Shown: in pieces, positions 1,736-21,000 of the stretch
Position numbering within the stretch: position 1 is the first letter of the stretch
Layout: every line of letters begins with the position of its first letter
NCBI GenBank assembly: GCA_002269645.1
Contig: NIVC01003199.1
Location: 1 to 49,967, forward strand
Direction of reading: 5' to 3'
DNA: 49,967 nt
Source of the DNA: Macrostomum lignano
Lineage: Eukaryota
Position numbers and translations under genes: made by a program
The notes under the pieces: model-generated
Databases searched by the model: none
What the model was told of the DNA's origin: nothing
The model's input: only the letters and a program-made list of their open reading frames with translations

Positions 1736-4637
1736 ATGGCCGAGGGCTTGTTCGAAAGCTTTGACGAAATCGAGTGCCACTCCAAGTGGCTGCCCGAGCT
1801 CAATTGCGACAGCCAAGAAGTTGACAAAATCCTCGAGGAGCTCCATTGGCAAAGCGACAATTATCCTTGGCTGAAAGGTTTATGCTTGCTCGCCATCGCG
1901 CACCTGCACACTCTGCCAGGGTCATGTGACATCGAAAAGGCACGAGAGAAACTCGAATCGATTAAGCCGTGTGAAGCAGTTTCAGGTGATCTGCCACAGC
2001 CGGATGTTAAATTTCTAGTTAAAGCAATGGAATGGAGTCACAACCAAGTCTGCCATCCAAATACAAAGACCGGCTGGAGGAATTGTCAACCTGTGGAAAG
2101 ATAAGTCAGTTCAGGCCACTTGCTTTGTTGCCAAAGGCTGGACAATGCACTGGTTTGCTGTCGGCAATAATCGAGAGGATTCTTTCCAAATTTGTGCTTC
2201 GTCTTTGTTAAAAGCGAAATCAATTATTGAAGGCGTAACTGGTGAAACTGAGAAGCTTAAAGTGGTTGAATTTATCTGCCTGCACAGTTTGGCGTTCGCC
2301 TTCTTCCGGAGACGAGAAAATCACCATCGACTGTGCAATGATGAGTTTGTCTGCTGGGACAATGCGTACAAAATTTTGACAGACAAAGAGTGGCGGCATC
2401 CAATTTTCTTGCTGGAGTTCGCTAGGGCAGTCTCTTGTTCACCTGGTCACGTAGAGTTGTGCAAAAAACTGTTAGCGGAAGAGAAAAAAAATCGAGAACA
2501 ACAGGAGAAGTATTATCAAACGTACATAATTTTGCCGGATATATTTTCGTGGCTGAAGAAGACACGAAAAAATGATAGCTTTTTGATCGAACTTGAAGTA
2601 GATATCAGCAGTTTGCTTGAAGAAGGAAGAAAAATCGAAAAACTACAACAACATAAAAAATTTTTGCGTCGAATAGTTGAGTTTCTAATCAGCTGCTCAA
2701 GACGAGAAGACGCCAGAGAGCTGTTGCAGAACACAAAGGAGGAGTGGAACACAGAGCTCTATAGGCCATCCAGCAAATACTGGTTCGAAACAACGCTGAT
2801 CGCTTTAGAAATACCCAAAACAGCCAAGGGATGCCAGAAGCTACAGCCTAAAGAGATCGAATCCTTCCTATACCGACTAGAAAACCTGTGCACAAACGTT
2901 CCGTCAAAAGCAAGGCAAGTTCGACTGACAAAAGGCATTTTTTTAATAAAGTGCGGCTACATCGATGAAGGCATGAAGTGCTTAGCGTGGGCCATGAATG
3001 ACTACCTGCATCCAGCACAAAGCTTCAAGCAGTTTTGGCCAAAAGAAATTAAAGAAGCTAAAACTGTTTTAGAAGAAACAACGGACAAAAAAAAGTACCT
3101 GAATTGGGTTGAAAGTCAATTCGAAACTCATTCGGCATTTTATCACGTCGATGACTCGATACAAAAGTACCAGACTGAGCTGAATAGGCAGGATTTAACA
3201 GAAGATGAGACATTTTTCATTACCGAGCACCTCGGAAGGCTGCTGTTGAGGAAGTACAGGTTTGAAGAGGCGGAGCAAAAGTTCAGGTCTCTGCCTGAGG
3301 CTCTGGAGCACAAAAACGCAGTGATTGCTGACTCCCTCTTGTGCCAGGCGGAAAGTTTGTCCAGCGGTGATGACGTCACAGAAGTTTGCAAGACTAAGTT
3401 TAAAGCAGAGCCAGATAATGCAGTCCACACAACCAGCATCGGGATGCGGCTGTACCTGCTGAACGAGTGTGCAAAGCTGGGCTGCAGAGACGCCATTCAT
3501 GAGGCGCTGCTTCTGCTGGAGGACATCCGGAAGCAGAGTGGCAGAGGTCACTTGTTACAGCAAGCTCCAGACAGTGACAGCGGTCACTTGTTGCAGCAAG
3601 CTCCAAACCATTTGTTCCTGCACAGCAGTCGCGTCTACGTGTTTTGCTCCCGGCTGCTTCGGCTGAGAGAGCGGGGCTTCCAAATTGAGCGAAGAAAAAG
3701 CTTTTTGGACTCTGGCGGTGACCAGATGGGTGACATGCTGGACAAAGTAGAGCAAATCTTGGCCACTGAGTTGTATCCAAGAAGAATTCGACTGAAAATG
3801 ACACAGCTGAGCTTGAAGTATGAATCAGTAGAGGACATGCTTCAGAGTCCCGAGGCTGAGCGCAGCATTTGGCACACGCTGGAGGAGTCCCGAAAAGCAC
3901 TCGATAGCTTCTGGGCTCAATTCGTCTCTAAAGTGGAGAAGCAGAAAGGTTTCTCCCAGTCTAAAGCGATATATTATCCATATTATCCATTTGCCCGCCG
4001 TGATTTGAAAAGCAGCCCTGAAAGTTTTTTAGACCTTTTCAAAAAAAATTGGAGAGATCAAGCAAAACTGTTTACTTCACTTTTGGAAACCATGAAAAGC
4101 ACTATTGAATGCCTCGGCAAGGCTAAGGAGAAGGTACACGAACTTAATGAATGCTTGAAGAATCTGGAAAATATTGACAAAGTTAGGTTAAAAGAAGAAG
4201 TGTCAGGTGATCAGCTAAACGATTTCAAACAGCAGCTGGGGAAGCTCAAGAAATTTTTCGACCCTGCTACCACTGACGCAATTAATTCAAAGCAAGCAGA
4301 CTCAATTGACAAGCTTACAAAGTCCAGTAAGAAATTTTACGAAATGCTACAGAAACCATTCCCACTCGCGTTTCGAGCGAATGACGAAGTCTGTAAATGG
4401 ATGATCCGGAAGGAAAAAGACATTGATTCCAAACAAGGTTGTTGGCATGTACACTGGTGCAACGAAGTCAACTCCGATAAGCACATTTATCCGGTTGATG
4501 TTGCCAAATTCAACGAAAAAATCAAAGAAAGATTTACTGGTAATCAGAAGCAGAGTGGGCCAATAGATGTTCTGGCTTTGGCTCATTGCGCTGCGGAATT
4601 CGCTGAAGAGGCCAGGCTCGTTCTCGAAGAGTACACG
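1736..4637 (+). CDS. Large exon: alpha-helical/TPR-like protein region with C-terminal HEPN-like domain
   Basis: ORFs 1688-2104 and 2145-4652 overlap in two frames (second frame is open from 2019). TPR-like helices include FITEHLGRLLLRKYRFEEAEQKF and LTKGIFLIKCGYIDEGMKCLAWAM. C-terminal motifs are EESRKALD, YYPF, LQKPF and NSDKH. Confidence 0.7.
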
Positions 4638-6977
4638 GTAAGTTTTTCTTAATTCTATGTTTTAAGAATCAAAGTATCTGTTTTTTGATTAGACATTGTA
4701 AAATGGAGATCACCAAACAAAGATGATTCAAATGCTGTTTTTAAGCTCTTTTCGATAGTGTAGCAGGTGTAATTTTACTTATTTGTTCGATCTCGCAATT
4801 TCCACTAAATACCACCAAGTTGTAGCAGATTTATTTGTTCTGCCTAATTGAATCACTCCGTTTGTCAACAAGTTACCAACGTATGACTCTTTTCTAGGAA
4901 ATTTCCTGGTTCACTAGATTTCTTTGGTAAGACACTGGTCTAAATTGCTAAATTAAGTCCAAAATTACAGCGTTTCCGGGGACCAAGGGTGTCCAGCGGC
5001 GAGCCTTAATACCTAATATTTGTCTGTCTTCTAATGCCTAATAATTAACATCTAATCTTATGACCTTCTTAATACCCCTTGAGGCTGTACGGCTTTATCT
5101 CTACTGGGTCTGTTCGACCTCTATTGCCTGTGCGGCCTTTTTCCTACTTCTGGGTCTGTACGACCTTTATTGCCTGTACGGTCGTTTCCCTACTTCTGGG
5201 ATAAGAAATGAATAAGCAAAGATCATCTGTCAGCAGAAATTTCCTTTATCAAAAGAGGCAAGCTAGGAACAAACTGGAGCTTGCTCAAGTTAGCTAGTTT
5301 TATTTTCATGCCAGGCGAAGCCTTTTTATAGTAAACAAAGGGGTGTGGGGTGCATCGTAATTGGCGGGGACAACTTAAAACAAAATTAGATGAAAATTTT
5401 ATCAGAAATAGGATTTACAACAAATAATACCGTATTAAAACAAAAAATTTATTTTTGGTTGCTAAATTAGCAACCATTGCGATTTTTGGTCGCATGTAGC
5501 TACTTATAGTAATGAAATGGGGATTGGCAGACCCCACTTTAATAGCGAAAGGTAGACGTGTGAAATACTTTGCTAAGCTATGATATCAGCATAAATTTAA
5601 ATTCACCTAGAAGCTCGGCTGGAAATAAAAAATACGGATTCTATTCAACTTTTTCTATTCTCAAACACTGTTTTCAAGCTCTTATAGATTAATTTGAGAA
5701 CCGAAAGTAGTGGGTTAAAATTTGCATACATTTAATTTACCGACTGATTTATAAGACTCGGTTTACAATCAATCTACCCTTGTATCATAAAACTAAATTC
5801 GGTTTGCAGTACCCGGAGGTAACCATTCCAACGAAGCCAGACGCCATCGGTGAAAACTTCGAGTGGAGCCTTGTCTGCTACTCGTGTGCTCAGCCGAACG
5901 ACGTATTGCGCAGCAGATGGAGCCGCTTGCAGAATGAATGTGCCAACTGTGACAAGTGCATTCTGCTGGTCAGAGAGAAGGCCAGTACGGAACCAAGTGA
6001 CGTTTGGCAGCGGGTCCGACCCAGACCAAGGAAACTCGTCAAGCTGGACATGTGCAGGAGATACAGCGATATAGAATCCTGCAACGGTTGCAATCGTTCT
6101 GAATGCGACTTTGCCCATGGAGACGCGGAGCTGCGGCTGTGGGAGCTGGAGAGAATCGGCAAGTTCTCCTTCAACAAGCTGCTGAAGTCCAATCGATCAG
6201 CTGGGTCAGAACTGCCGCTGATTCTCTGCGAGCGGCCTGCGGTCGAAGGAGGCTCGGAGACCCGAATTTTCTACACGGGTCCGGAGCCGCTTCCCGCCAG
6301 ACTCCCTGTGAAACAACAAAGATTCTACTATCCGCTCTGCGAATCGCTTTTTGATGGAACTGAGTGTCAACATTATAATCGAGGCAAATGCTTCAGTGCA
6401 CACTGTGCTGAGGAGGAGCAGCTGTGGAACATCATGCAACAGAAAAGAGGTAAAACCAAGAAGCTTCATCTACATGTAAATGTACGAGTATATGGGATGA
6501 AGTTCAAGTGTGTTAAGTATAATATTACAATGACAAAGTTAACGCTCGTATTGCAATTCATTAACCTGTTTAGATAGTTGGCCCGAACATCTGGCTTCAA
6601 GAATAGATAAAATCGAGCCCGAACTCATTGGCTGGAGCCTCGAATCGAGCTGCGACTACAAGCTGACCTGCTACAGGTGCTCCGAATCACTGGATCCTCT
6701 GAGAAGCAGATTCAAGCTGAAGGAAACACAGAACTGTGAGCGGTGCGACCAGAGCATCCTGCTGGTCAGATCGAAGAACAATCAAATCAACAAGTGGCAA
6801 CGCATCCGAGACAGACAAGGACATCTGGTCATATGTGATCTCTACCAATCAAACAAATGCAGGCGCTCCGAATGTGACTTCGCTCATGGCGATGTGGAAC
6901 TGAAGCTGTGGAAGCTGGAGAGAATCGGCAAGTTCTCTTTCAACAAGCTGCTGAAGTCCAATCGATCAGCTATGTAA
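1736..6977 (+). CDS. Putative spliced gene: helical/TPR-like region + HEPN-like domain + tandem ZC3H7/RoXaN-type CCCH zinc-finger modules (exons 1736-4637, 5810-6449, 6574-6977; one frameshift at ~2019-2104)
   Basis: Donor ACG|GTAAGT at 4638 (phase 0) matches acceptor TTTGCAG|TAC at 5810 (phase 0). Donor AGAG|GTAAAA at 6450 (phase 1) matches TTTAG|AT at 6574 with an open frame. The start (ATG 1736) is uncertain. Confidence 0.6.
5085..5200 (+). repeat. 46-bp tandem repeat, ~2.5 copies (intronic)
   Basis: TGGGTCTGT at 5105 and 5151; TGCCTG at 5125 and 5171. Confidence 0.75.
5810..6449 (+). CDS. Exon encoding a ZC3H7/RoXaN/HELZ2-N-type zinc-binding module plus a second degenerate CCCH finger
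   Basis: LVCYSC...CANCDKCILLV...WQRVRPRP...DMC...C...CDFAHGDAELRLWELER, then LCESLFDGTECQHYNRGKCFSAHCAEEEQLW. Canonical AG/GT boundaries. Confidence 0.8.
6574..6977 (+). CDS. Exon encoding a second copy of the ZC3H7-type CCCH module
   Basis: Hand translation: (D)SWPEHLASRIDKIEPELIGWSLESSCDYKLTCYRCSESLDPLRSRFKLKETQNCERCDQSILLVRSKNNQINKWQRIRDRQGHLVICDLYQSNKCRRSECDFAHGDVELKLWKLERIGKFSFNKLLKSNRSAM*. Missed by the ORF track. A possible donor AT|GTAAG at 6974 overlaps the stop. Confidence 0.8.
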
Positions 6978-12037: not shown

Positions 12038-15000
12038 TCAAATATCGCTCTCGTGATGCTTATTGCCCTTCTTCCTATTGTCTATGGTTGACATGCTGAA
12101 ATCGTTCACATTGTCGTCAAGAATTTTGTCCTCCTTGCTGAAGCCCGTCTGCTGGTAGATGATGTCATTTAGTAGCTGAAATGAAAAACAATGCGACAAT
12201 AAAACCAAGGTCAGTTTCTTCAGTTGTGACACTTGCGGATGAAGAAAATAGAAATGATTTTTTTGTTCTGTAGAGTCTATGGCCAGAACTCTCCTTTCTA
12301 GCTTTGATCTGCTGTCTATGGCCAGAACTCTCCTTTCTAGCTTTGATCTGCTGTCTATGGCCAGAACTCTCCTTTCTAGCTCTGATCTGCTGTCTATGGC
12401 CAGAACTCTCCTTTCTAGCTTTGATCTGCTGTCTATGGCCAGAAATCTCCTTTCTAGCTTTGATCTGCTGTCTATGGCCATAACTTTTATTTCTAGCTTT
12501 GATATGCTGTCTATGGCCAGAACTTTCATTTCCAGCTTTGATATGCTGTCTATGGCCAGAACTTTCATTTCCAGCTTTGATCTGCTGTCTATGGCCAGAA
12601 CTTTCATTTCTAGCTTTGATATGCTGTCTATGGCCAGAACTTTCATTTCTAGCTTTGATCTGCTGTCTATGGCCAGAACTTTCATTTTCAGCTTCGATAT
12701 GCTGTCTATGGCCAGAACTTTCATTTCTAGCTTTGATATGCTGTCTATGGCCATAACTTTTATTTCTAGCTTTGATCTGCTGTCTATGGCCAGAACTTTC
12801 ATTTCTAGCTTTGATCTGCTGTCTATGGCCAAAACAGACAGACATTTAATCTTAGAATTTGATAGCAATAAATATGCTCAATAGATAGAAGCTGACGAGG
12901 CTGTTAAAAATGGCTATAAAGCGAGTGACCAATCAAATCTAGATCATAAAAAGCTATTAATACTACTTACATCGTCATCTTCGCCCTCCTCGGATACGAT
13001 TAGATTGCGTCTAGCGGCAGCTTTCGACTCGGTCTTGCGCACTGATGGCATTGGAGCTCCATTTAGCTGGTGGAGGTTGTCGATTTGGTGGCATTGATTA
13101 AATAAGCTTGGATCTATTAATAGTAGCACTTTCTATATATCAGTGTCTTTCGATCCATCTCACCCCTGTATCTCAGAGTCTAATCTCACCCCCTGTATCT
13201 TAGAGTCTATATCTCACCCATGTATCTCAGAGTCTATATCTCACCCATGTATCTCAGAGTCTATATCTCACCCCTGTATCTCAGAGTCTATATCTCACCC
13301 CTGTATCTCAGTCTATATCTCTCCCCCTGTATCTCAGAGTCTATATCTCACCCCTGTATCTCAGAGTCTATATCTCGCCCCTGTATCTCAGAGTCTATAT
13401 CTCACCCCTGTATCTCAGAGTCTATATCTCTCCCCCTGTATCTCAGAGTCTATATCTCGCCCCTGTATCTCAGAGTCTATATCTCACCCCTGTATCTCAG
13501 AGTCTATATCTCACTCCCTGTATCCCACAGTTTTTATCTCACCCCTGTATCTCAAAGTCTATATCTAACCCTGAGTCTCCCTGTAACTCAGGGGTCTCCC
13601 TGTATCTCAGGGGTCTCCCTGTATCTCAGGGGTCTCCCTGTATCTCAGGGGTCTCCCTGTATCTCAGGGGTCTCCCTGTATCTCAGGGGTCTCCCTGTAT
13701 CATTCCCCCCTCAACCCCCATGGCCCAGTCCTGTATCGCTCACAGATTTCTCTCGCCGCTCAGTCCCGGCAGCGCCAGCGGGCTCAATCTCATCAGTTGG
13801 ATGCTCATCATAGCATGGCGGTCCGTGCGATCCGTGAGTCTCCACCACTTTGCTAGTGACAACCTGGCGCACCTGTTTCCGTTTGACAATTCGTTTAGTG
13901 ACCTTGTTGCCATGCTCATCCGTGTAGGTTTCCACCTCTTCGACTGGGTCGCCGACTTGTTCGCTCTGTTAAATACAAATTCAGAAAGATGAAAGTCTGT
14001 GACTACTAGCAGTAGGGAAAATGCTAAATATGTTTAAAAAAAAACGGAAAAGCTACTAACATTAATCAAATGATAGAACAGAACTACAGATCGACATATA
14101 GGTACAAAATTAATATAAACATGCTATACGAATACTTACATATAAATAATAAAAGAAAATATAAACAGAGCCATGCACAAAAAACTGCAAAAACGCAAGA
14201 AATCGCTTAAGAATCATTTTATAATCGATAAAAACGGCAGACGACCACACAGGAAGGTTGTAAGCCAGGGATCGGCAAACTCCGGCTCTCGGGTCCTTCG
14301 ATCAACTTCGCAATAGCAATTCAGTCAGCTTAAGGTTTGTGTCTCTTTTCGCCTCCTTCTCTTTTCTCTTTTCTTATAATATGAGATATTCGACATATCG
14401 GCACTTTGCTTAACACATCTCTGCATTACTGCATCATTTTCTCTCCTCCCTCTGTCTTTTCTCCTCTTTCCCTTCTCCCCTATCTCCTCTCTTCTCCTTC
14501 CTCTCTCCCGTCTTTTCTCTTTTCCTTCTGTCTTCTCTCCTCTCTCCCTTTTTCTCCCCTTTCCTCTCTCCCCTCTTCTCTCCTCCCCCTGTCTTCTCTC
14601 CTCTCTTCTTTTTCCTCTCTCCCTTCTCCTCTCCTCCCCCCTGTCTTCTCTCCTCTCTTCTTTTTCCTCTCTCCCTTCTCCTCTCCTCCCCCTGTCTTCT
14701 CTCCTCTCTTCTTTTTCCTCTCTCCCTTCTCCTCTCCTCCCCCTGTCTTCTCTCCTCTCTCCCTTTTTCTCCCCTTTCCTCTCTCCCCTCTTCTCTCCTC
14801 CCCCTGTCTTCTCTCCTCTCTTCTTTTTCCTCTCTCCCTTCTCCTCTCCTCCCCCCTGTCTTCTCTCCTCTCTTCTTTTTCCTCTCTCCCTTCTCCTCTC
14901 CTCTCCCTGTCTTCTCTCCTCTCTTCTTTTTCCTCTCTCCCTTCTCCTCTCCTCCCCCCTGTCTTCTCTCCTCTCTTCTTTTTCCTCTCTCCCCTCTCCT

Positions 15001-18000
15001 CTCCTCCCCCCTGTCTTCTCTCCTCTCTTCTTTTTCCTCTCTCCCCTCTCCTCTCCTCCCCCCTGTCTTCTCTCCTCTCTTCTTTTTCCTCTCTCCCCTC
15101 TCCTCTCCTCCCCCCTGTCTTCTCTCCTCTCTTCTTTTTCCTCTCTCCCCTCTCCTCCCCTCCCCCCTGTCTTCTCTCCTCTCTTCTTTTTCCTCTCTCC
15201 CCTCTCCTCTCCTCCCCCCTGTCTTCTCTCCTCTCTTCTTTTTCCTCTCTCCCCTCTCCTCTCCTCCCCCTGTCTTCTCTCCTCTCTTCTTTTTCCTCTC
15301 TCCCTTCTCCTCTCCTCCCCCTGTCTTCTCTCCTCTCTTCTTTTTCCTCTCTCCCCTCTCCTCTCCTCCCCCTGTCTTCTCTCCTCTCTTCTTTTTCCTC
15401 TCTCCCCTCTCCTCTCCTCCCCCTGTCTTCTCTCCTCTCTTCTTTTTCCTCTCTCTCCATTCCTCTCCTCCCCCTGTCTTCTCTCCTCTCTTCTTTTTCC
15501 TCTCTCCCCTCTCCTCTCCTCCCCCTGTCTTCTCTCCTCTCTTCTTTTTCCTCTCTCCCCTCTCCTCTCCCCCCTGTCTTCTCTCCTCTCTTCTTTTTCC
15601 TCTCTCCCCTCTCCTCTCCTCCCCCTGTCTTCTCTCCTCTCTTCTTTTTCCTCTCTCCCCTCTCCTCTCCTCCCCCTGTCTTCTCTCCTCTCTTCTTTTT
15701 CCTCTCTCCCCTCTCCTTTCGCTTCTCCCTCCCCTATTATCTCCTCACATCCTCCATCTTTTCTCTCATCCTACCTGCGTATCGCTTCTGCCCACCCCTC
15801 TCTCCTCTTATCTACTATTCCCTCTCCTTATCAGTCTAATCTGGCCCGCGGCCATGAGCTGGATTCTTTACTATCTAGCCATTGGCTTAAGGTAAAAAAG
15901 TTTGCAGACCCACTTGCTATAAACAATGATACGTGCATCAAGCAAGGTAAACTACAGGAGGGTAATAGAGGTACAATTAGTAGGCTAGGAAGCTAATAAA
16001 CCGGCTCTAATCCAGATACGCAAGCAGCTAGCAAAGGATTACTTGAGTGACAAAGGTTCGCTCTTTCGGATCGCCCTGGAAATGATGATGATGCTTCGGA
16101 TAGCCCTGATGCTCGCAGCCTCCTCCGTCGCCTGCGGCACCGGCCTCGGCCATCTCCATCATGGCCATGGACTTGGAGATATTGTCATCGGAGTAGTCCG
16201 CAGGCTTTTATTGGAAAAAAATAAGTACGCATTGAACTTTTCAAGTGATAAAATTTTATTAGGGGACATTTGAAGGTCACGGATACAAACAAGACAATGT
16301 ACTGTTGATCAGACAGTCGCTATAAACTCTCTCACCTCCGTTCGGTGCTCGTGAACGGCAGTTCCACCACCGCCGCCATTGTAGCCGCCGTGCAATTGGC
16401 CGGCGTGAATCTGCTGCTTGTTCTCACGGATGACGTCATATTTGTGATCAACAGACGGCAGGTTGGAGTTCTGCGTTGCGTGATTGGTTGAGATTATTTT
16501 AGAGACAAGTGAAGCGAAGAATTTCAACAATTATATATTGCAGTTACAGCTTATCACCACCCAGCTTACCCTCTTTGTGAGGCTTTCCTGAAGCATTCTA
16601 GGATCAACGTAGGTAAATCCTTTGGACTTGCGCTGCAATGCAATTTGTGACGGGTGATGATTAGGGATCTGTGTAGATTGCTTAGGGATCTGTGCAGATT
16701 GCTTAGGGATCTGTGTAGATTGCTTAGGGATCTGTGTAGATTGCTTAGGGATCTGTGTAGATTGCTTAGGGATCTGTGTAGATTGCTTAGGGATCTGTGC
16801 AGATTGCTTAGGGATCTGAGTAGATTGCTTAGGGATCTGTGTAGATTGCTTAGGGATCTGTGTAGATTGCTTAGGGATCTGTGTAGATTGCTTTGGGATC
16901 TGTGTAGATTGCTTAGGGATCTGTGTAGATTGCTAAGGGATCTGAGTAGATTGCTTAGGGATCTGTGTAGATTGCTTAGGGATCTGTGTAGATTGCTTTG
17001 GGATCTGTGTAGATTGCTTTGGGATCTGTGTAGATTTCTTAGTGATCTGTGTAGGGGACCACTAAAAAGGGATCTGTGGGGATCACTAATAAGGGATCTG
17101 TGGGGATCACTAAAAAGGGATCTGTGGGGATCACTAACAAGGGATCTGTGGGGATCACTAAAAAGGGATCTGTGGGGATCACTAAAAAGGGATCTGTGGG
17201 GATCACTAACAAGGGATCTGTGGGGATCACTAATAAGGGATCTGTGGGGACCACAAAAAAGGGATCTGTGGGGATCACTAAAAAGGGATCTGTGGGGATC
17301 ACTAATAAGGGATCTGTGGGGACCACAAAAAAGGGATCTGTGGGGATCACTAATAAGGGATCTGTGGGGATCACTAAAAAGGGATCTGTGGGGACCACTA
17401 AAAAGGGATCTGTGGGGATCACTAAAAAGGGATCTGTGGGGATCACTAATAAGGGATCTGTGGGGATCACTAATAAGGGATCTGTGGGGATCACTAACAA
17501 GGGATCTGTGGGGATCACTAATAAGGGATCTGTGGGGACCACTAACAAGGGATCTGTGGGGACCACTAAAAAGGGATCTGTGGGGATCTTAAAAGATCTG
17601 ATGGGGATTTTTATGATCCCAACCAGTTTTTTAGGATTGACTTCAATTTTGAAGGGATTTTTGGGAACTATTATAGATAGGAATAATTTCAAGATTTAGG
17701 GCTAAGTTTAAAGAATGATACACAATAGAAATCAGCACTCACGTCCATAACTCCGGTCTTTCCGCTTCGCCGTACGGAATCCTCGCTAGCCAGACACACT
17801 GGAGTCCACTCGTCGCCAGGAGGATATTTGAAGGGCGTCTGGCCGAGATTGACAAACAGAGTCTGGTCCCGCATGCTCACTGTGGGATAGAATGCCTCCT
17901 GGCTGAGCACTTGGCTGGGCAGCTGGTAGGCGGGGCCCATCAGGGCGCTGTTGCGAGCGAACTGCATCTGGCCGTGGTCCAGATCTAAGAAGCAGCCAAC

Positions 18001-21000
18001 AACGTCGCCTTTGCCAAACGGTTCGCCATAGCTGTCAATCTCGTCTGAGTGCATCTTTTTGCCTTGATTGCCGGCCAGCCCGAAGCCGTCGGGATCGGCG
18101 CCGTAGCCCCAGCCGGCGGCGTCTCGGCCGATGTCCAGGCCGCCCGACTCGGTGGTCCAGCCGGCTCTGGACAGGCCGCGGGCCTCCTGCGGCTCCACCT
18201 CGTAGTAGAACCGGCCGCCAGCCCGACCGCGGAGACCTTTGTTGGCGCGGACGCCCTGGTTGGTGTTGACGGTTGGATGACTGATTTATGCTTGATTGAT
18301 GACTGGTTGATGACGATTGACAAGAGGTTGATGATGGTTGATGATGGCTGATGATGATTGATGATGATTGTTGATGGTCAATGATGATTGATGATAGCTA
18401 ATGGTGTTTGGTGATGATTGATGACGGTTGATAATAGATTTACAGTGAGAGCTGATAGATAACTGATTGCTAGTTGACTATAGATGCCGGCTGATGCAAA
18501 TGCACAACAGTTGCAACTCCCGCGCCCACCTGCCAGCCGAAGCCCAGCTGACTCTGCGCAGAGGCACCGTCGGGTCCCAGCGTCAGTCCGGGGCCGCTGG
18601 TGTCGTGCTGATTCAGCCGCCAGGCGCGCGGATTCTCGGCCTGTTGATTGGCCGGCGCCAAACCGACGGGCCGCCAGACGCCGGCCGGCCGGTACAGCAG
18701 CGGCCTGGCCGGATCGTCGCCGAAGTTCCAGTGGGCGGCGGCGCCGGGGGCGAGGCAGGCGGCCGGGTAGAACACCTCACGGCGCATGTCGTGCGGCAAT
18801 TCGTAGGCGAGGCCCAACTCTTTGCCATTGACTGAGTACAGCACAGAGCCGCCGTCTAAGTCGACGAAAACTCCGACAACGTCGCCGCTGGCTAGACGAT
18901 CGCCGTAGGCCTCGGCGACGCCGCGGTTGTACTTTTCGCCGTTGGCCCCGTAGCCGAAACCGTGGGCGTCGTCGCCTAGGCGCAGACTGGCGGAGCTGGT
19001 CGACCAGCCAACTCTGGCTGGCACAGGCTGATCGCCGGCAGGTGTTGCCATGGTAACCGTGGCTTCGTAGTACCACTGGCCGCCGTTGCAAACTCCGCGA
19101 TCGGTACGGCAGCCCTGGGATAGGAATGCGTCATTGTTGATAAATGCAGTTTTTAATACCATTGACTCTATCAAATTAAAGTACACGTGTGACTAAAGTA
19201 CAAATGTGCCAGTTCTAGAGTACAGATGTATTAGTTTAAAAGTTTTTTATTACAGGGTCGCCACACACACCCTCAATTACCCTAGCTAAAACCTGATACC
19301 CATTTTGCAGCTGGGTGAACTGAAGCAATGCAGAGTTACGAGTAAGTGTCTTGCTTAAGGACACGAGTTGTTCCAAGTAGGTTGATAATCGAATCCCCGA
19401 CTTTTCAGTGGTAAGCCCGACACTAAACTACTAGGCTGAAATCCCTCAAAACACACACTAGTACACATGTACTAGTTCAAAAAGTACACATGTACTAGTT
19501 CAAAAAGTACACATGCACTAGTTCAAAAAGTACACATGTACTAGTTCAAAAAGTACACATGCACTAATTCAAAAAGTACACATGTACTTGTTCAAAAAGT
19601 ACACATGTACTAGTTCAAAAAGTACACATGTACTAGTTCAAAAAGTACACATGTACTAGTTCAAAAAGTACACATGTACTAGCTCAAAAAGCACATTTAA
19701 ATAGTGAACACAGCAGAGCTTATAGCTGATGGAAAATTAAAGCAGCTCACCTGCCAATCAGGCGCCCCGACGGGACAGGCGCCAACTGATCGGCCAGAGT
19801 CCAGACTGGCTGACAGCATTGGCTCAGCGTCGGCCGGAGACATGTGCCAACGGGACGGCCGTTCAACCACCAGCTCAGGTCGACGGTCCATCTGATCGCG
19901 TTGCTGCTGCTGCTGCATTTGCATCTGTTGCTGGCGCCACAAGGTGACGTCGCTAATAGTGCCGTCCCCGGCGCCGCCGTAGATGTTGCCGCGAGATCCG
20001 TTGGCAGCGGCGGCTCGCAGCTCGCGATTGTAGGCGTCCTCTGAGGAATTTGAATTCAATGTTACAAGGATTTGCAATTTGGAATGAAATTGAAGCCTGC
20101 AGCATTGAGACTTAATTTTGAAGGATTTTATACCTGAGAAGGGTTTTGGATTAGGGATTTGGGGAGGATTATGGATAAGAAAATTATGGAGTTGAATAGG
20201 ATTAGGGACTTGAGGAGGATTAGGGATTTGAGAACTAGGGATTTTAAAAGGATTGGGGATTTAAAGACTACGGATTTAAATAGGATTAGGGATTTGAGGA
20301 AGATTAGGGATTTGAGGACGACTAGGGATTTGAATAGGATTAAGGATTTGAGGAGGAGGATTAGGGATTTAAAGACTACGGATTTGAATAGGATTAGGGA
20401 TCTGGGGAGGACTAGGGATTTAAAAAGGATTACGGATTCGAAGATAATTAGAGATTTGAAGTCAACTACAGAATTATACTGAAGTATAAGGACAGTCAGA
20501 GAAATTGAGATTCAATACCAAGGATTTTGAATTTGAAGGATTTTGGATTTGAAGGGGCTCAGGGTTCGGGATTCTTAACTGGGATTCGAATTGCATAATA
20601 TTTGAATCACACCTTTCTGTCTGAAGCTCTTGCGCATATCGCTAGTAACGGGCATCTCCTGATAGTTGCCGTAGGTCTGATCGTTGAGCTGGTCGCGAGT
20701 CGGCCCAGTGTAATTCCATTTGTTCTTGAATGTGCCAGGAATCAGCGGCTTGGACGGCTTCTCCGGCGATTTGAGTCTGCGCGGGTTGAGCCATAGTAAC
20801 GGATTAGGCGAGCTTTAGATTGTGCAGAGATGAATACGGTAGGGAATTAACAATGACTATAGGGAGAGGCCGATGGGACGGCTCAGAGGGAAATAACAGC
20901 TTGGATAATCCAGGCATTAATCCAGTAGATATTATTGATTATCTAAGGGTTAATCCAGTAGGGATTATCGATAAAGGATTATTGATTATTGAAGAATTAA

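What the first reader, a model, noticed from the sequence alone, without database searches (positions are those of the whole stretch)
3860..4637. HEPN-like domain resembling a bacterial 'RSALD...FP...QPY...NxDKH' family, with a long coiled-coil insert
Seen, in order: WHTLEESRKALDSFWAQ (3882, an Ex3K motif), IYYPYYPF, ~110 aa of K/E-rich coiled coil, EMLQKPF, WHVHWCNEVNSDKHIYP (4470). Known: HEPN domains carry an Ex3[KR] helix and an R-N/x-x3-5-H catalytic motif. From memory, many uncharacterised bacterial proteins have the same motif series HNLRSALD-x-FP-x-LQPY-x-W-x-N-x-DKH. The canonical Arg is absent (VNSDKH), so Lys may substitute or the domain may be inactive. The family match is recollection, not a search result.
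Basis: inference. Interest (0 to 1): 0.72.

Follow-up and report, generated by a model that had tools for sequence, protein, structure and literature searches.

The report
Conserved unclassified domain in flatworm IFIT-like protein
The flagged stretch is a real, conserved but unclassified helical domain at the end of a flatworm protein whose front half resembles vertebrate antiviral IFIT RNA sensors; it may be an RNA-cutting module, but its HEPN identity and bacterial relatives could not be confirmed.

Summary
They lie in the large exon of a Macrostomum lignano-type gene, 91% identical to UniRef A0A1I8J5T1.

A profile search of 1.84 billion proteins found only 16 relatives. They are M. lignano paralogs plus ORFs on long contigs of an unidentified organism that looks eukaryotic.

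- **Conservation:** W219, W223, K231, H232, H266 and E273 are invariant. [R/K]208, E209, N228 and E270 are nearly so. NSDKH is therefore a conserved N-x2-K-H.
- **Insert:** the roughly 100-aa helical insert is real and lineage-specific. Minimal relatives lack it, and it evolves fastest.
- **HEPN:** not confirmed. There was no Pfam, PADLOC, PDB or Foldseek match. The defining Arg is missing in every member.
- **Bacterial relatives:** none found.
- **New context:** the family's N-terminal part matches IFIT5 and IFIT1. Its tails are CCCH or RGG modules.

Best guess: an RNA-directed effector domain, possibly a divergent HEPN-like RNase. Confidence is low.

The parts
1736..2090 (+). Start of the gene (ATG 1736, MAEGLFESFDEIECHSKW...) and the N-terminal IFIT-like segment. 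Compared with paralog P0001 it is out of frame with the main ORF, through two 1-nt losses in A-runs near 2030 and 2088.
   Evidence: tblastn of P0001 and three-frame translation. The ECH[FS][KT]W motif aligns with CHFTW of IFIT5/IFIT1.
2082..3848 (+). TPR-like / IFIT-like helical array in the large exon.
   Evidence: Full-length family alignment A3. Profile A3 hits IFIT5 3zgq at E 7.6e-5 and IFIT1 4hou at E 0.009. Paralogs P0008, P0015 and P0026 have Pfam TPR hits.
3849..4016 (+). N-block of the domain: long helix alphaA carrying L-E-E-S-R-K-A-L-D (3879-3905), then the YYPFA loop (3981-3995).
   Evidence: Conserved as L-x-[ED]-[SAV]-[RKH]-x2-L-D and YP[FH]A in all 12 members that include this part. 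AF2 helix 21-52, pLDDT 70-85.
4017..4313 (+). Lineage-specific helical (coiled-coil-like) insert, residues 77-175 of window:3789-4637.
   Evidence: Absent from minimal relatives: the LD-to-NxxKH distance is about 95 aa in P0009, P0011, P0012 and P0016, against 196-213 here and in P0002. AF2 gives long helices 77-136, 140-156 and 159-188. Best Foldseek matches are SMC, HlyD and AhlC coiled coils, none significant. It is the fastest-evolving part: 69% identity to P0001, against 96% and 90% for the flanks.
4314..4637 (+). C-block, the conserved core (about 110 aa, 4-5 helices). It contains E185-x3-K189 (4341-4355), K208-E209 (4410-4415), W219/W223 (4443-4457), N228-S-D-K231-H232 (4470-4484) and H266/E270/E273 (4584-4607).
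   Evidence: Alignments A2 and A4. This is the segment matched in all distant relatives (profile positions about 196-296). In the AF2 model, helix 219-229 ends just before D-K-H, which lie in the following loop.
4638..5809 (+). Intron (GTAAGT ... TTTGCAG).
   Evidence: Sequence and tblastn junction EEYT|YPEVTIPTK.
5810..6449 (+). Exon encoding the first Cys-rich module: zinc-ribbon-like CxxC...CxxC plus a CCCH-type C..C..CDFAHG finger.
   Evidence: tblastn to P0001 and P0002. Exon ends located. UniRef names P0001 'C3H1-type domain-containing protein'.
6574..6977 (+). Last exon, after intron 6450-6573: second Cys-rich/CCCH module and stop codon TAA at 6975-6977.
   Evidence: Translation and junction QQKR-D|SWPEHL as in P0003. 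The corresponding part of P0001 (1287-1337) hits ZC3H7A zinc finger 2d9m at E 0.0012.

Best explanation
Positions 3849-4637 encode the C-terminal domain of a multi-domain protein. The protein consists of an IFIT-like TPR array, then this domain, then repeated zinc-ribbon/CCCH modules. I propose the domain is the effector end of an RNA-directed sensor-effector protein. The IFIT-like array and the CCCH (or, in paralogs, RGG) tails would hold RNA. The conserved C-block would act on that RNA, most likely as a divergent HEPN-like, metal-independent endoribonuclease. In that model H232 is the general base, N228 and K231 replace the missing Arg, and E209 sits on the preceding helix. The lineage-specific helical insert would serve as a dimerisation or regulatory arm. 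Shown: the domain, its conservation, the insert, the IFIT-like N-terminus and the RNA-binding-type tails. Inferred: RNA as the substrate, catalysis, the HEPN fold and dimerisation.
For: (1) The invariant or near-invariant polar residues (N228, K231, H232, H266, E270, E273, E209, [R/K]208) persist across sequences only 20-30% identical overall. That suggests an active or ligand site rather than a scaffold. (2) phi-N-x2-K-H has the N-to-H spacing of the canonical R-N-x3-H. In the AF2 model it sits at the end of a helix and the start of the next loop, where HEPN places Rx4-6H (PMC3710099). (3) A near-invariant Glu (E209) lies on the helix just before it, as HEPN has an acidic residue on helix 2. 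(4) The C-block is about 110 aa and all-alpha, which is HEPN-sized. (5) Context fits. TPR fusions recur among HEPN families such as DZIP3/hRUL138, C6orf70 and LA2681. The N-terminus here is IFIT-like. The tails are CCCH or RGG. (6) One relative (P0013) carries two copies in tandem, an arrangement seen in Swt1. (7) There are many diverged paralogs in one genome, with variable tails and a fast-evolving insert. This is typical of conflict or immune genes.
Against: No HEPN family or structure was hit by any search. The Arg that defines Rx4-6H is V, I, H or D in all 15 members, and in characterised HEPN RNases that Arg is needed for activity. A second invariant His and a Glu stripe on the last helix (H266, E270, E273) are not HEPN features and could indicate a metal site. 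The AF2 model is only moderate (pLDDT 67.7, pTM 0.53), and its core could not be searched apart from the insert. No RNA binding or cleavage was tested. This copy carries two apparent frameshifts upstream.
Confidence: 0.3

Rival explanations
1. It is a non-catalytic RNA- or protein-binding helical domain. It could be a degenerate HEPN or a relative of the bacterial DUF1722 (YbgA/RudS C-terminal) tRNA-binding domain. It would add RNA affinity or specificity to the IFIT-like array without cutting.
For: The HEPN Arg is absent. HEPN domains without the motif are thought to be binding modules. Paralog P0026 passes Pfam's DUF1722 threshold (29.2 bits against 22.5, E 1.2e-6) over the N-block region, and P0007 and P0019 match weakly. 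DUF1722 helps RudS bind the tRNA anticodon arm (PMC11417400).
Against: The window protein and the family consensus do not hit DUF1722. My own 15-sequence DUF1722 HMM gives P0026 only 8.8 bits. hhalign of family against DUF1722 gives probability 1.4%, and in a different register. The matched stretch is helical and K/E/L-rich, so composition bias is likely. An invariant N..KH/H/E/E constellation is more than a binding domain usually keeps.
Confidence: 0.25
2. It is a new metal-dependent enzyme or metal-binding helical bundle. H232, H266, E270, E273 and E209 would bind the metal, and the domain would be unrelated to HEPN.
For: There are two invariant His and three conserved Glu. H266-x3-E270-x2-E273 lie on one face of the last helix. 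There is no similarity to any known family.
Against: No recognised metal-site motif (HExxH, HD, ExxH pairs) is present. No structural evidence brings the residues together. Nothing supports it beyond residue types.
Confidence: 0.15
3. It is a structural continuation of the TPR/helical solenoid, serving as a scaffold or oligomerisation module with no ligand chemistry of its own.
For: It is all-alpha, directly follows a TPR array, and contains a long helical hairpin that could mediate assembly.
Against: It has no TPR signature, and Pfam TPR models stop well before it. Invariant charged and polar residues are not what a packing module conserves.
Confidence: 0.15
4. It is a domain recently acquired from bacteria: the reader's 'bacterial NxDKH family'.
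Against: The profile search of 1.84 billion proteins returned only Macrostomum proteins and ORFs on long contigs of an unidentified organism. The one locus I inspected, P0010's, carries retrotransposon genes. Pattern plus tblastn scans of 185,579 bacterial and archaeal genomes, of JGI metagenomes and of IMG/VR found nothing.
Confidence: 0.03

Closest known systems
HEPN superfamily (Anantharaman et al. [quoted passage not shown]
   Same: A small all-alpha unit. A conserved polar motif ending in His, placed at a helix end and loop start. The Asn sits four residues before the His, as in R-N-x3-H. An acidic residue lies on the preceding helix. The domain is fused to TPR repeats and RNA-binding modules. 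One relative has a tandem dyad.
   Different: The defining Arg is absent in every member. There is no profile or structure match to any HEPN family. It has an extra invariant His/Glu stripe on the last helix. The large insert lies before the C-block rather than between helices 2 and 3.
IFIT1/IFIT5 (interferon-induced proteins with tetratricopeptide repeats)
   Same: The family's N-terminal ~170 positions align with IFIT5 and IFIT1 (E 7.6e-5 and 0.009). The alignment includes the CHF[TK]W motif and the KG-x5-F-G block, and is followed by a TPR array.
   Different: IFITs end after the TPR array. This family adds the conserved C-terminal domain and CCCH or RGG tails. The hosts are a flatworm and an unidentified organism, whereas IFITs are described as starting in jawed vertebrates (PMC3688568). 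IFIT5 K150 is not conserved in the alignment. RNA binding was not tested.
DUF1722 (PF08349; E. coli YbgA, C-terminal domain of RudS tRNA 4-thiouridine desulfidase)
   Same: A helical domain. One paralog (P0026) scores above Pfam's threshold across the N-block region: H-x-x-G-x-F-K-K-x-L and S-x-T-E-R-x-x-[FL] resemble H-V-Q-G-Y-F-R and S-T-E-R-Q-Q-L of YbgA. It is RNA-associated.
   Different: The match is confined to one M. lignano subfamily. The window protein, the family consensus, my own HMM and hhalign do not support it. DUF1722 lacks the W..W....N..KH and AH.AAEF.E motifs.
ZC3H7A/ZC3H7B (TPR plus CCCH zinc-finger proteins)
   Same: The overall plan is TPR repeats followed by CCCH fingers. 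The last finger of P0001 hits the ZC3H7A finger 2d9m at E 0.0012.
   Different: No match outside that finger. ZC3H7 is not known to me to have the intervening N..KH domain or the IFIT-type N-terminus.
RNase L (repeat-based sensor fused to a HEPN/KEN RNase), as a working analogy only
   Same: A single chain with a repeat-domain ligand sensor followed by a helical nuclease that acts as a dimer.
   Different: It has a different sensor (ankyrin repeats binding 2-5A), includes a pseudokinase, and its KEN domain is circularly permuted. No homology is shown.

Membership tests
HEPN superfamily | Four-helix up-down bundle of about 100-120 aa, often with an insert between helices 2 and 3 | tested here: inconclusive
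   The AF2 model is all-alpha with core pLDDT 70-88. Foldseek against PDB and BFVD was dominated by the long helical insert and gave no hit at E<=0.001.
HEPN superfamily | Rx4-6H motif at the end of helix 3 / start of the following loop | tested here: not met
   His (H232) is invariant and sits in the right kind of position. The Arg position is V, I, H or D in all 15 members. The conserved motif is N-x2-K-H.
HEPN superfamily | Conserved acidic residue upstream, typically E-x3-[KR] on helix 2 | tested here: inconclusive
Family-wide there is [ED]-x-[RKH]-x2-L-D on alphaA, an E-x-[IV] helix before the C-block core, and near-invariant E209 on the helix before N..KH. Which of these, if any, is equivalent is unknown.
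HEPN superfamily | Significant sequence-profile similarity to a recognised HEPN family | tested here: not met
   No HEPN model was hit at E<=10 in Pfam-A. This held for 15 members, the insert-deleted window sequence and the family consensus. The same held for PADLOC, NCBIfam and PDB sequence profiles.
   The HMMER profile search of 1.84 billion proteins returned 16 hits. Those I looked up were M. lignano proteins or unnamed ORFs on long contigs of an unidentified organism, and none carried a bacterial name. Scans of GTDB genomes, JGI metagenomes and IMG/VR found none.
DUF1722 (PF08349) | Score above Pfam's gathering threshold | tested here: inconclusive
   Met by paralog P0026 (29.2 against 22.5 bits). 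It is weak in P0007 and P0019. It is not met by the window protein or the family consensus. It was not reproduced by my own HMM (8.8 bits) or by hhalign (probability 1.4%).
IFIT family (applies to the N-terminal part of the same protein) | Specific similarity to IFIT N-terminal subdomain, including the CHFTW motif, followed by a TPR array | tested here: met
   Profile A3 hits IFIT5 at E 7.6e-5 and IFIT1 at E 0.009, ahead of all generic TPR proteins in the PDB. The CHF[TK]W and KG..F.G blocks are aligned. Paralogs have TPR Pfam hits.
IFIT family | Binding of 5'-triphosphate or cap0 RNA; induction by infection or interferon | not testable with these tools
In the alignment the position of IFIT5 K150 is not a conserved Lys.
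CCCH (C3H1) zinc finger (applies to the C-terminal exons) | C-x-C-x-C-x3-H finger with significant similarity to known fingers | tested here: met
   P0001 residues 1287-1337 hit the ZC3H7A finger 2d9m at E 0.0012. UniRef names the protein C3H1-type. Pfam zf-CCCH models did not hit.

The most novel reading that the evidence does not exclude
A flatworm, and at least one other unidentified organism, carries single-chain antiviral-type proteins. In them an IFIT-like RNA 5'-end sensor is fused directly to a previously undescribed catalytic domain (an Arg-less HEPN variant or a wholly new RNase/phosphoesterase fold) and to RNA-binding tails. If so, IFIT-type RNA sensing predates vertebrates and was once coupled to its own effector.
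Probability: 0.2. Interest if true: 0.75.

Novelty: new variant of a known kind. Interest (0 to 1): 0.55.

Why it matters
IFITs are described as a jawed-vertebrate invention that only binds RNA. Here an IFIT-like array is joined to a conserved, probably catalytic, unannotated domain and to CCCH or RGG modules in a flatworm. That would give a testable sensor-plus-effector arrangement. It would also provide a new domain family for RNA biology and a data point on the pre-vertebrate origin of IFIT-type proteins. If the domain proves to be a HEPN lacking the canonical Arg, it would widen the accepted active-site definition of that superfamily.

Tried and rejected
- **Direct family scans:** Pfam, NCBIfam and PADLOC scans of the window domain, with and without the insert, gave only coiled-coil noise: ApoA-I, EzrA, PbeC, LmuB, DpdI.
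- **First AF2 run:** with a 3-sequence alignment it was unusable, pLDDT 41.
- **Word-index homolog searches:** they recovered only close Macrostomum paralogs and P0010. All three were used.
- **Foldseek:** run on the full model against PDB and BFVD, it matched only coiled coils, none significant.
- **PDB profile searches:** A2 and A4 gave nothing, or a chance 'DDKH' match to a chain the PDB entry names 'Fimbrial protein'.
- **DUF1722 lead:** I built an HMM from E. coli ybgA, GTDB loci and eight plasmid homologs. It did not confirm the Pfam hit. The metagenome scan for diverse DUF1722 returned only E. coli-like copies.
- **HEPN paper supplement:** it is only an index page, so no HEPN family alignments were available for hhalign.
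- **Organism behind the unnamed contigs:** not identified. The accession is not in the literature library, and only retrotransposon genes flank P0010.
- **Rejected readings:** the pancreatic RNase hit of P0015 (E 0.11) and the DUF7943 hit (E 0.04) are treated as chance.
Full report
**Observation.** The + strand has one long ORF at 2145-4652.
- WHTLEESRKALDSFWAQ at 3870-3920
- IYYPYYPF at 3969-3992
- EMLQKPF at 4341-4361
- WHVHWCNEVNSDKHIYP at 4443-4493, with NSDKH at 4470-4484

The ORF ends in a canonical GTAAGT donor at 4638, so it is an exon.

**What gene this is.** The ORF is 91% identical to UniRef A0A1I8J5T1, a 1346-aa 'C3H1-type domain-containing protein' of the flatworm Macrostomum lignano (P0001). 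It is 44% identical to a second M. lignano protein, P0002. tblastn and translation give this gene model:
- ATG at 1736
- large exon ending at 4637
- intron 4638-5809
- exon 5810-6449
- intron 6450-6573
- last exon 6574-6977, ending in TAA

Compared with P0001, this copy has two single-base losses in A-runs near 2030 and 2088. They put the first ~100 codons out of frame. This could be long-read assembly error or a pseudogene. I could not tell which.

**Is the domain real and conserved?** I built a profile of 3750-4637 plus the two paralogs (A1) and searched 1.84 billion representative proteins. There were only 16 hits at E<=0.001.
- Three distant hits are M. lignano proteins (P0005, P0007, P0008).
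- The rest are unnamed ORFs on ENA contigs, most of them 50-730 kb long.
- The one locus I could fetch carries LTR-retrotransposon genes, so that organism looks eukaryotic. It remains unidentified.

In the 15-sequence alignment A2 the identities to the window sequence are 20-40%. Even so, W219, W223, K231, H232, H266 and E273 are invariant. [R/K]208, E209, N228, A265, A269, E270 and F271 are at least 90% conserved (numbering of window:3789-4637).

The core motif is [RK]-E-x3-I-x5-W-x3-W-x4-N-x2-K-H, followed about 33 residues later by A-H-x-A-A-E-F-A-E. The upstream block L-x-[ED]-[SAV]-[RKH]-x2-L-D ... Y-P-[FH]-A is shared by all 12 members that extend that far.

**The insert.** The distance from the L-D motif to N-x2-K-H varies across the family:
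- about 95 residues in P0009, P0011, P0012 and P0016
- 113-161 residues in P0015, P0007 and P0008
- 196-224 residues in this gene, P0002 and P0010

So roughly residues 77-175 (4017-4313) are an insertion relative to the minimal form. AF2 with the 15-sequence alignment gave mean pLDDT 67.7 and pTM 0.53. It predicts the insert as long helices 77-136, 140-156 and 159-188, and the conserved blocks as helices with pLDDT 70-88.

The insert is the fastest-evolving part. It is 69% identical to P0001, against 96% for the N-block and 90% for the C-block. Against P0002 the figures are 26% for the insert and 53% and 45% for the flanks. Its K/E content is only slightly above that of the flanks.

**Tests of the HEPN reading.** The defining features, taken from Anantharaman et al. 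2013, are:
- a four-helix bundle of 100-120 aa
- Rx4-6H at the end of helix 3
- an upstream acidic residue, often E-x3-[KR], on helix 2
- frequent inserts between helices 2 and 3

Sequence searches were all negative:
- Pfam-A on the ORF, on the insert-deleted domain, on all 15 members and on the family consensus
- PADLOC
- NCBIfam
- PDB sequences with single-sequence and profile queries

Foldseek with the AF2 model, against PDB and BFVD, returned only non-significant coiled-coil matches such as SMC arms, HlyD and AhlC. That says the insert dominates the search. It says nothing about the core.

The Arg of Rx4-6H is V, I, H or D in every member, so that defining feature is not met.

Some points remain in favour:
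- N228 is four residues before H232, as in R-N-x3-H.
- The model ends helix 219-229 just before D-K-H, which is the HEPN position for the motif.
- A near-invariant Glu (E209) is on the preceding helix.
- The C-block (176-283, about 110 aa) is HEPN-sized.
- TPR fusions recur among HEPN families.
- One relative, P0013, has two copies in one ORF.

I therefore keep HEPN-like RNase as the leading mechanism, but only at about 0.3.

**Tests of the 'bacterial family' reading.** The 1.84-billion-protein search includes prokaryotic and metagenomic proteins. None of its hits carried a bacterial name. Pattern-plus-tblastn scans with the C-block alignment A4 found no relative in any of three collections:
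- 185,579 bacterial and archaeal genomes
- JGI metagenomes
- IMG/VR viral contigs

YHPFAY ... W ... NDDKH'.

**One bacterial lead is unresolved.** Paralog P0026 passes Pfam's DUF1722 threshold (29.2 bits against 22.5, E 1.2e-6) over its N-block region. P0007 and P0019 score weakly there too, but they are nearly identical to P0026 in that region, so this is one observation. DUF1722 is the YbgA/RudS helper domain that binds the tRNA anticodon arm (PMC11417400).

I built a DUF1722 alignment from E. coli ybgA, GTDB loci and eight plasmid homologs reaching Thermus and Bacteroidota.
- The resulting HMM gives P0026 only 8.8 bits, in the same register.
- hhalign of family against DUF1722 gives probability 1.4%, in a different register.
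- The window protein and the family consensus do not hit DUF1722.

The matched stretch is helical and K/E/L-rich. I treat it as probably compositional, but it is not excluded.

Full-length members align along their whole length (A3). They begin with a motif E-C-H-F-[KT]-W; in this gene it is ECHSKW, near 1775. A profile of A3 searched against PDB sequences puts IFIT5 first (3zgq, E 7.6e-5) and IFIT1 second (4hou, E 0.009). The alignment covers the first ~170 positions and includes CHFTW and the K-G-x5-F-G block. Generic TPR proteins score worse. Paralogs also hit Pfam TPR models.

The family is therefore an IFIT-like TPR array followed by this domain. The tails differ:
- zinc-ribbon plus CCCH modules in this gene, P0001 and P0003 (ZC3H7A finger 2d9m, E 0.0012)
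- RGG repeats in P0005 and P0008
- a GEATGVQA repeat in P0026
- no tail in the members from the unidentified organism

Both CCCH and RGG are RNA-binding module types (established knowledge). A 2013 survey placed the origin of IFITs in jawed vertebrates and found no invertebrate members (PMC3688568).

**Mechanism.** The shown facts are an RNA-sensor-like front, a conserved polar constellation in a small helical domain, RNA-binding-type tails, and many diverged paralogs in one genome. The most economical reading is an RNA-directed sensor-effector protein whose effector is this domain.
- Leading version, about 0.3: a HEPN-like metal-independent RNase. It would use H232, with K231 and N228 compensating for the lost Arg. 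The helical insert would act as a dimerisation or regulatory arm.
- Rival 1, about 0.25: a non-catalytic RNA-binding domain, either a degenerate HEPN or DUF1722-like.
- Rival 2, about 0.15: a new metal-dependent enzyme using H232, H266, E270 and E273.
- Rival 3, about 0.15: a structural extension of the solenoid.
- Rival 4: bacterial origin, which is essentially excluded by the searches run.

**Verdict.** The domain has no Pfam model of its own and appears to be undescribed. The IFIT-like context is the more interesting result.

Noticed in passing
window 2020-2100: Compared with paralog P0001 there are two single-base losses in A-runs (GGAA-ATGG near 2030, TCAA-ACC near 2088) and a 15-nt in-frame difference (LKLRI missing). 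The first ~100 codons, including the IFIT-like ECHSKW motif, are therefore out of frame with the main ORF. This is either long-read assembly error or a pseudogenised copy.
   Followed up: partly
window 1736-3848 and family alignment A3: The N-terminal part of the family is IFIT-like, with CHF[TK]W and KG..F.G aligned to IFIT5 and IFIT1 (E 7.6e-5 and 0.009). A 2013 survey (PMC3688568) reports IFITs as starting in jawed vertebrates.
   Followed up: partly
window 3546-3605: There is an 11-residue tandem duplication (GHLLQQAPDSD / SGHLLQQAPN) that is single-copy in P0001.
   Followed up: no
window 11047-38536: More than 15 unrelated minisatellite arrays (periods 18-51 bp, up to 47 copies) fill the region downstream of the gene. 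A CT-rich 51-bp x25 array at 14441-15717 explains the GC skew of -0.72 in that 2-kb bin. Several repeat units contain TTAGGG (16661-17054, 20148-20461).
   Followed up: no
window 5810-6977: The C-terminal exons encode two copies of a composite module: CxxC...CxxC zinc-ribbon-like, then W-Q-R-[IV]-R, then C..C..C-D-F-A-H-G CCCH finger, then L-W-x-L-E-R-I-G-K-F-S-F. Pfam zf-CCCH models do not recognise it. The predicted protein P0001 differs from this window between QQKR and the SSCDYKLTCYRC block, where the window has the short intron 6450-6573; P0003 reads across that junction as the window does.
   Followed up: partly
P0026 residues 649-734 (locus L120): An M. lignano paralog scores above Pfam's threshold for the bacterial/archaeal tRNA-binding domain DUF1722, and UniRef names it accordingly. 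My own HMM and hhalign did not reproduce the match.
   Followed up: yes
P0013 (ENA contig, 570 aa): Two complete, nearly identical copies of the domain lie in a single ORF. This is either a tandem dyad or an assembly duplication.
   Followed up: no
L001 1-9900: The P0010 copy has only the C-terminal half of the family architecture, with an LTR retrotransposon (gag, protease, RT) immediately upstream. It may be a truncated copy.
   Followed up: partly
P0005 and P0008 C-termini: These paralogs replace the CCCH modules with long RGG/RGRGG repeat tails. That is a second, independent RNA-binding-type appendage on the same domain.
   Followed up: no
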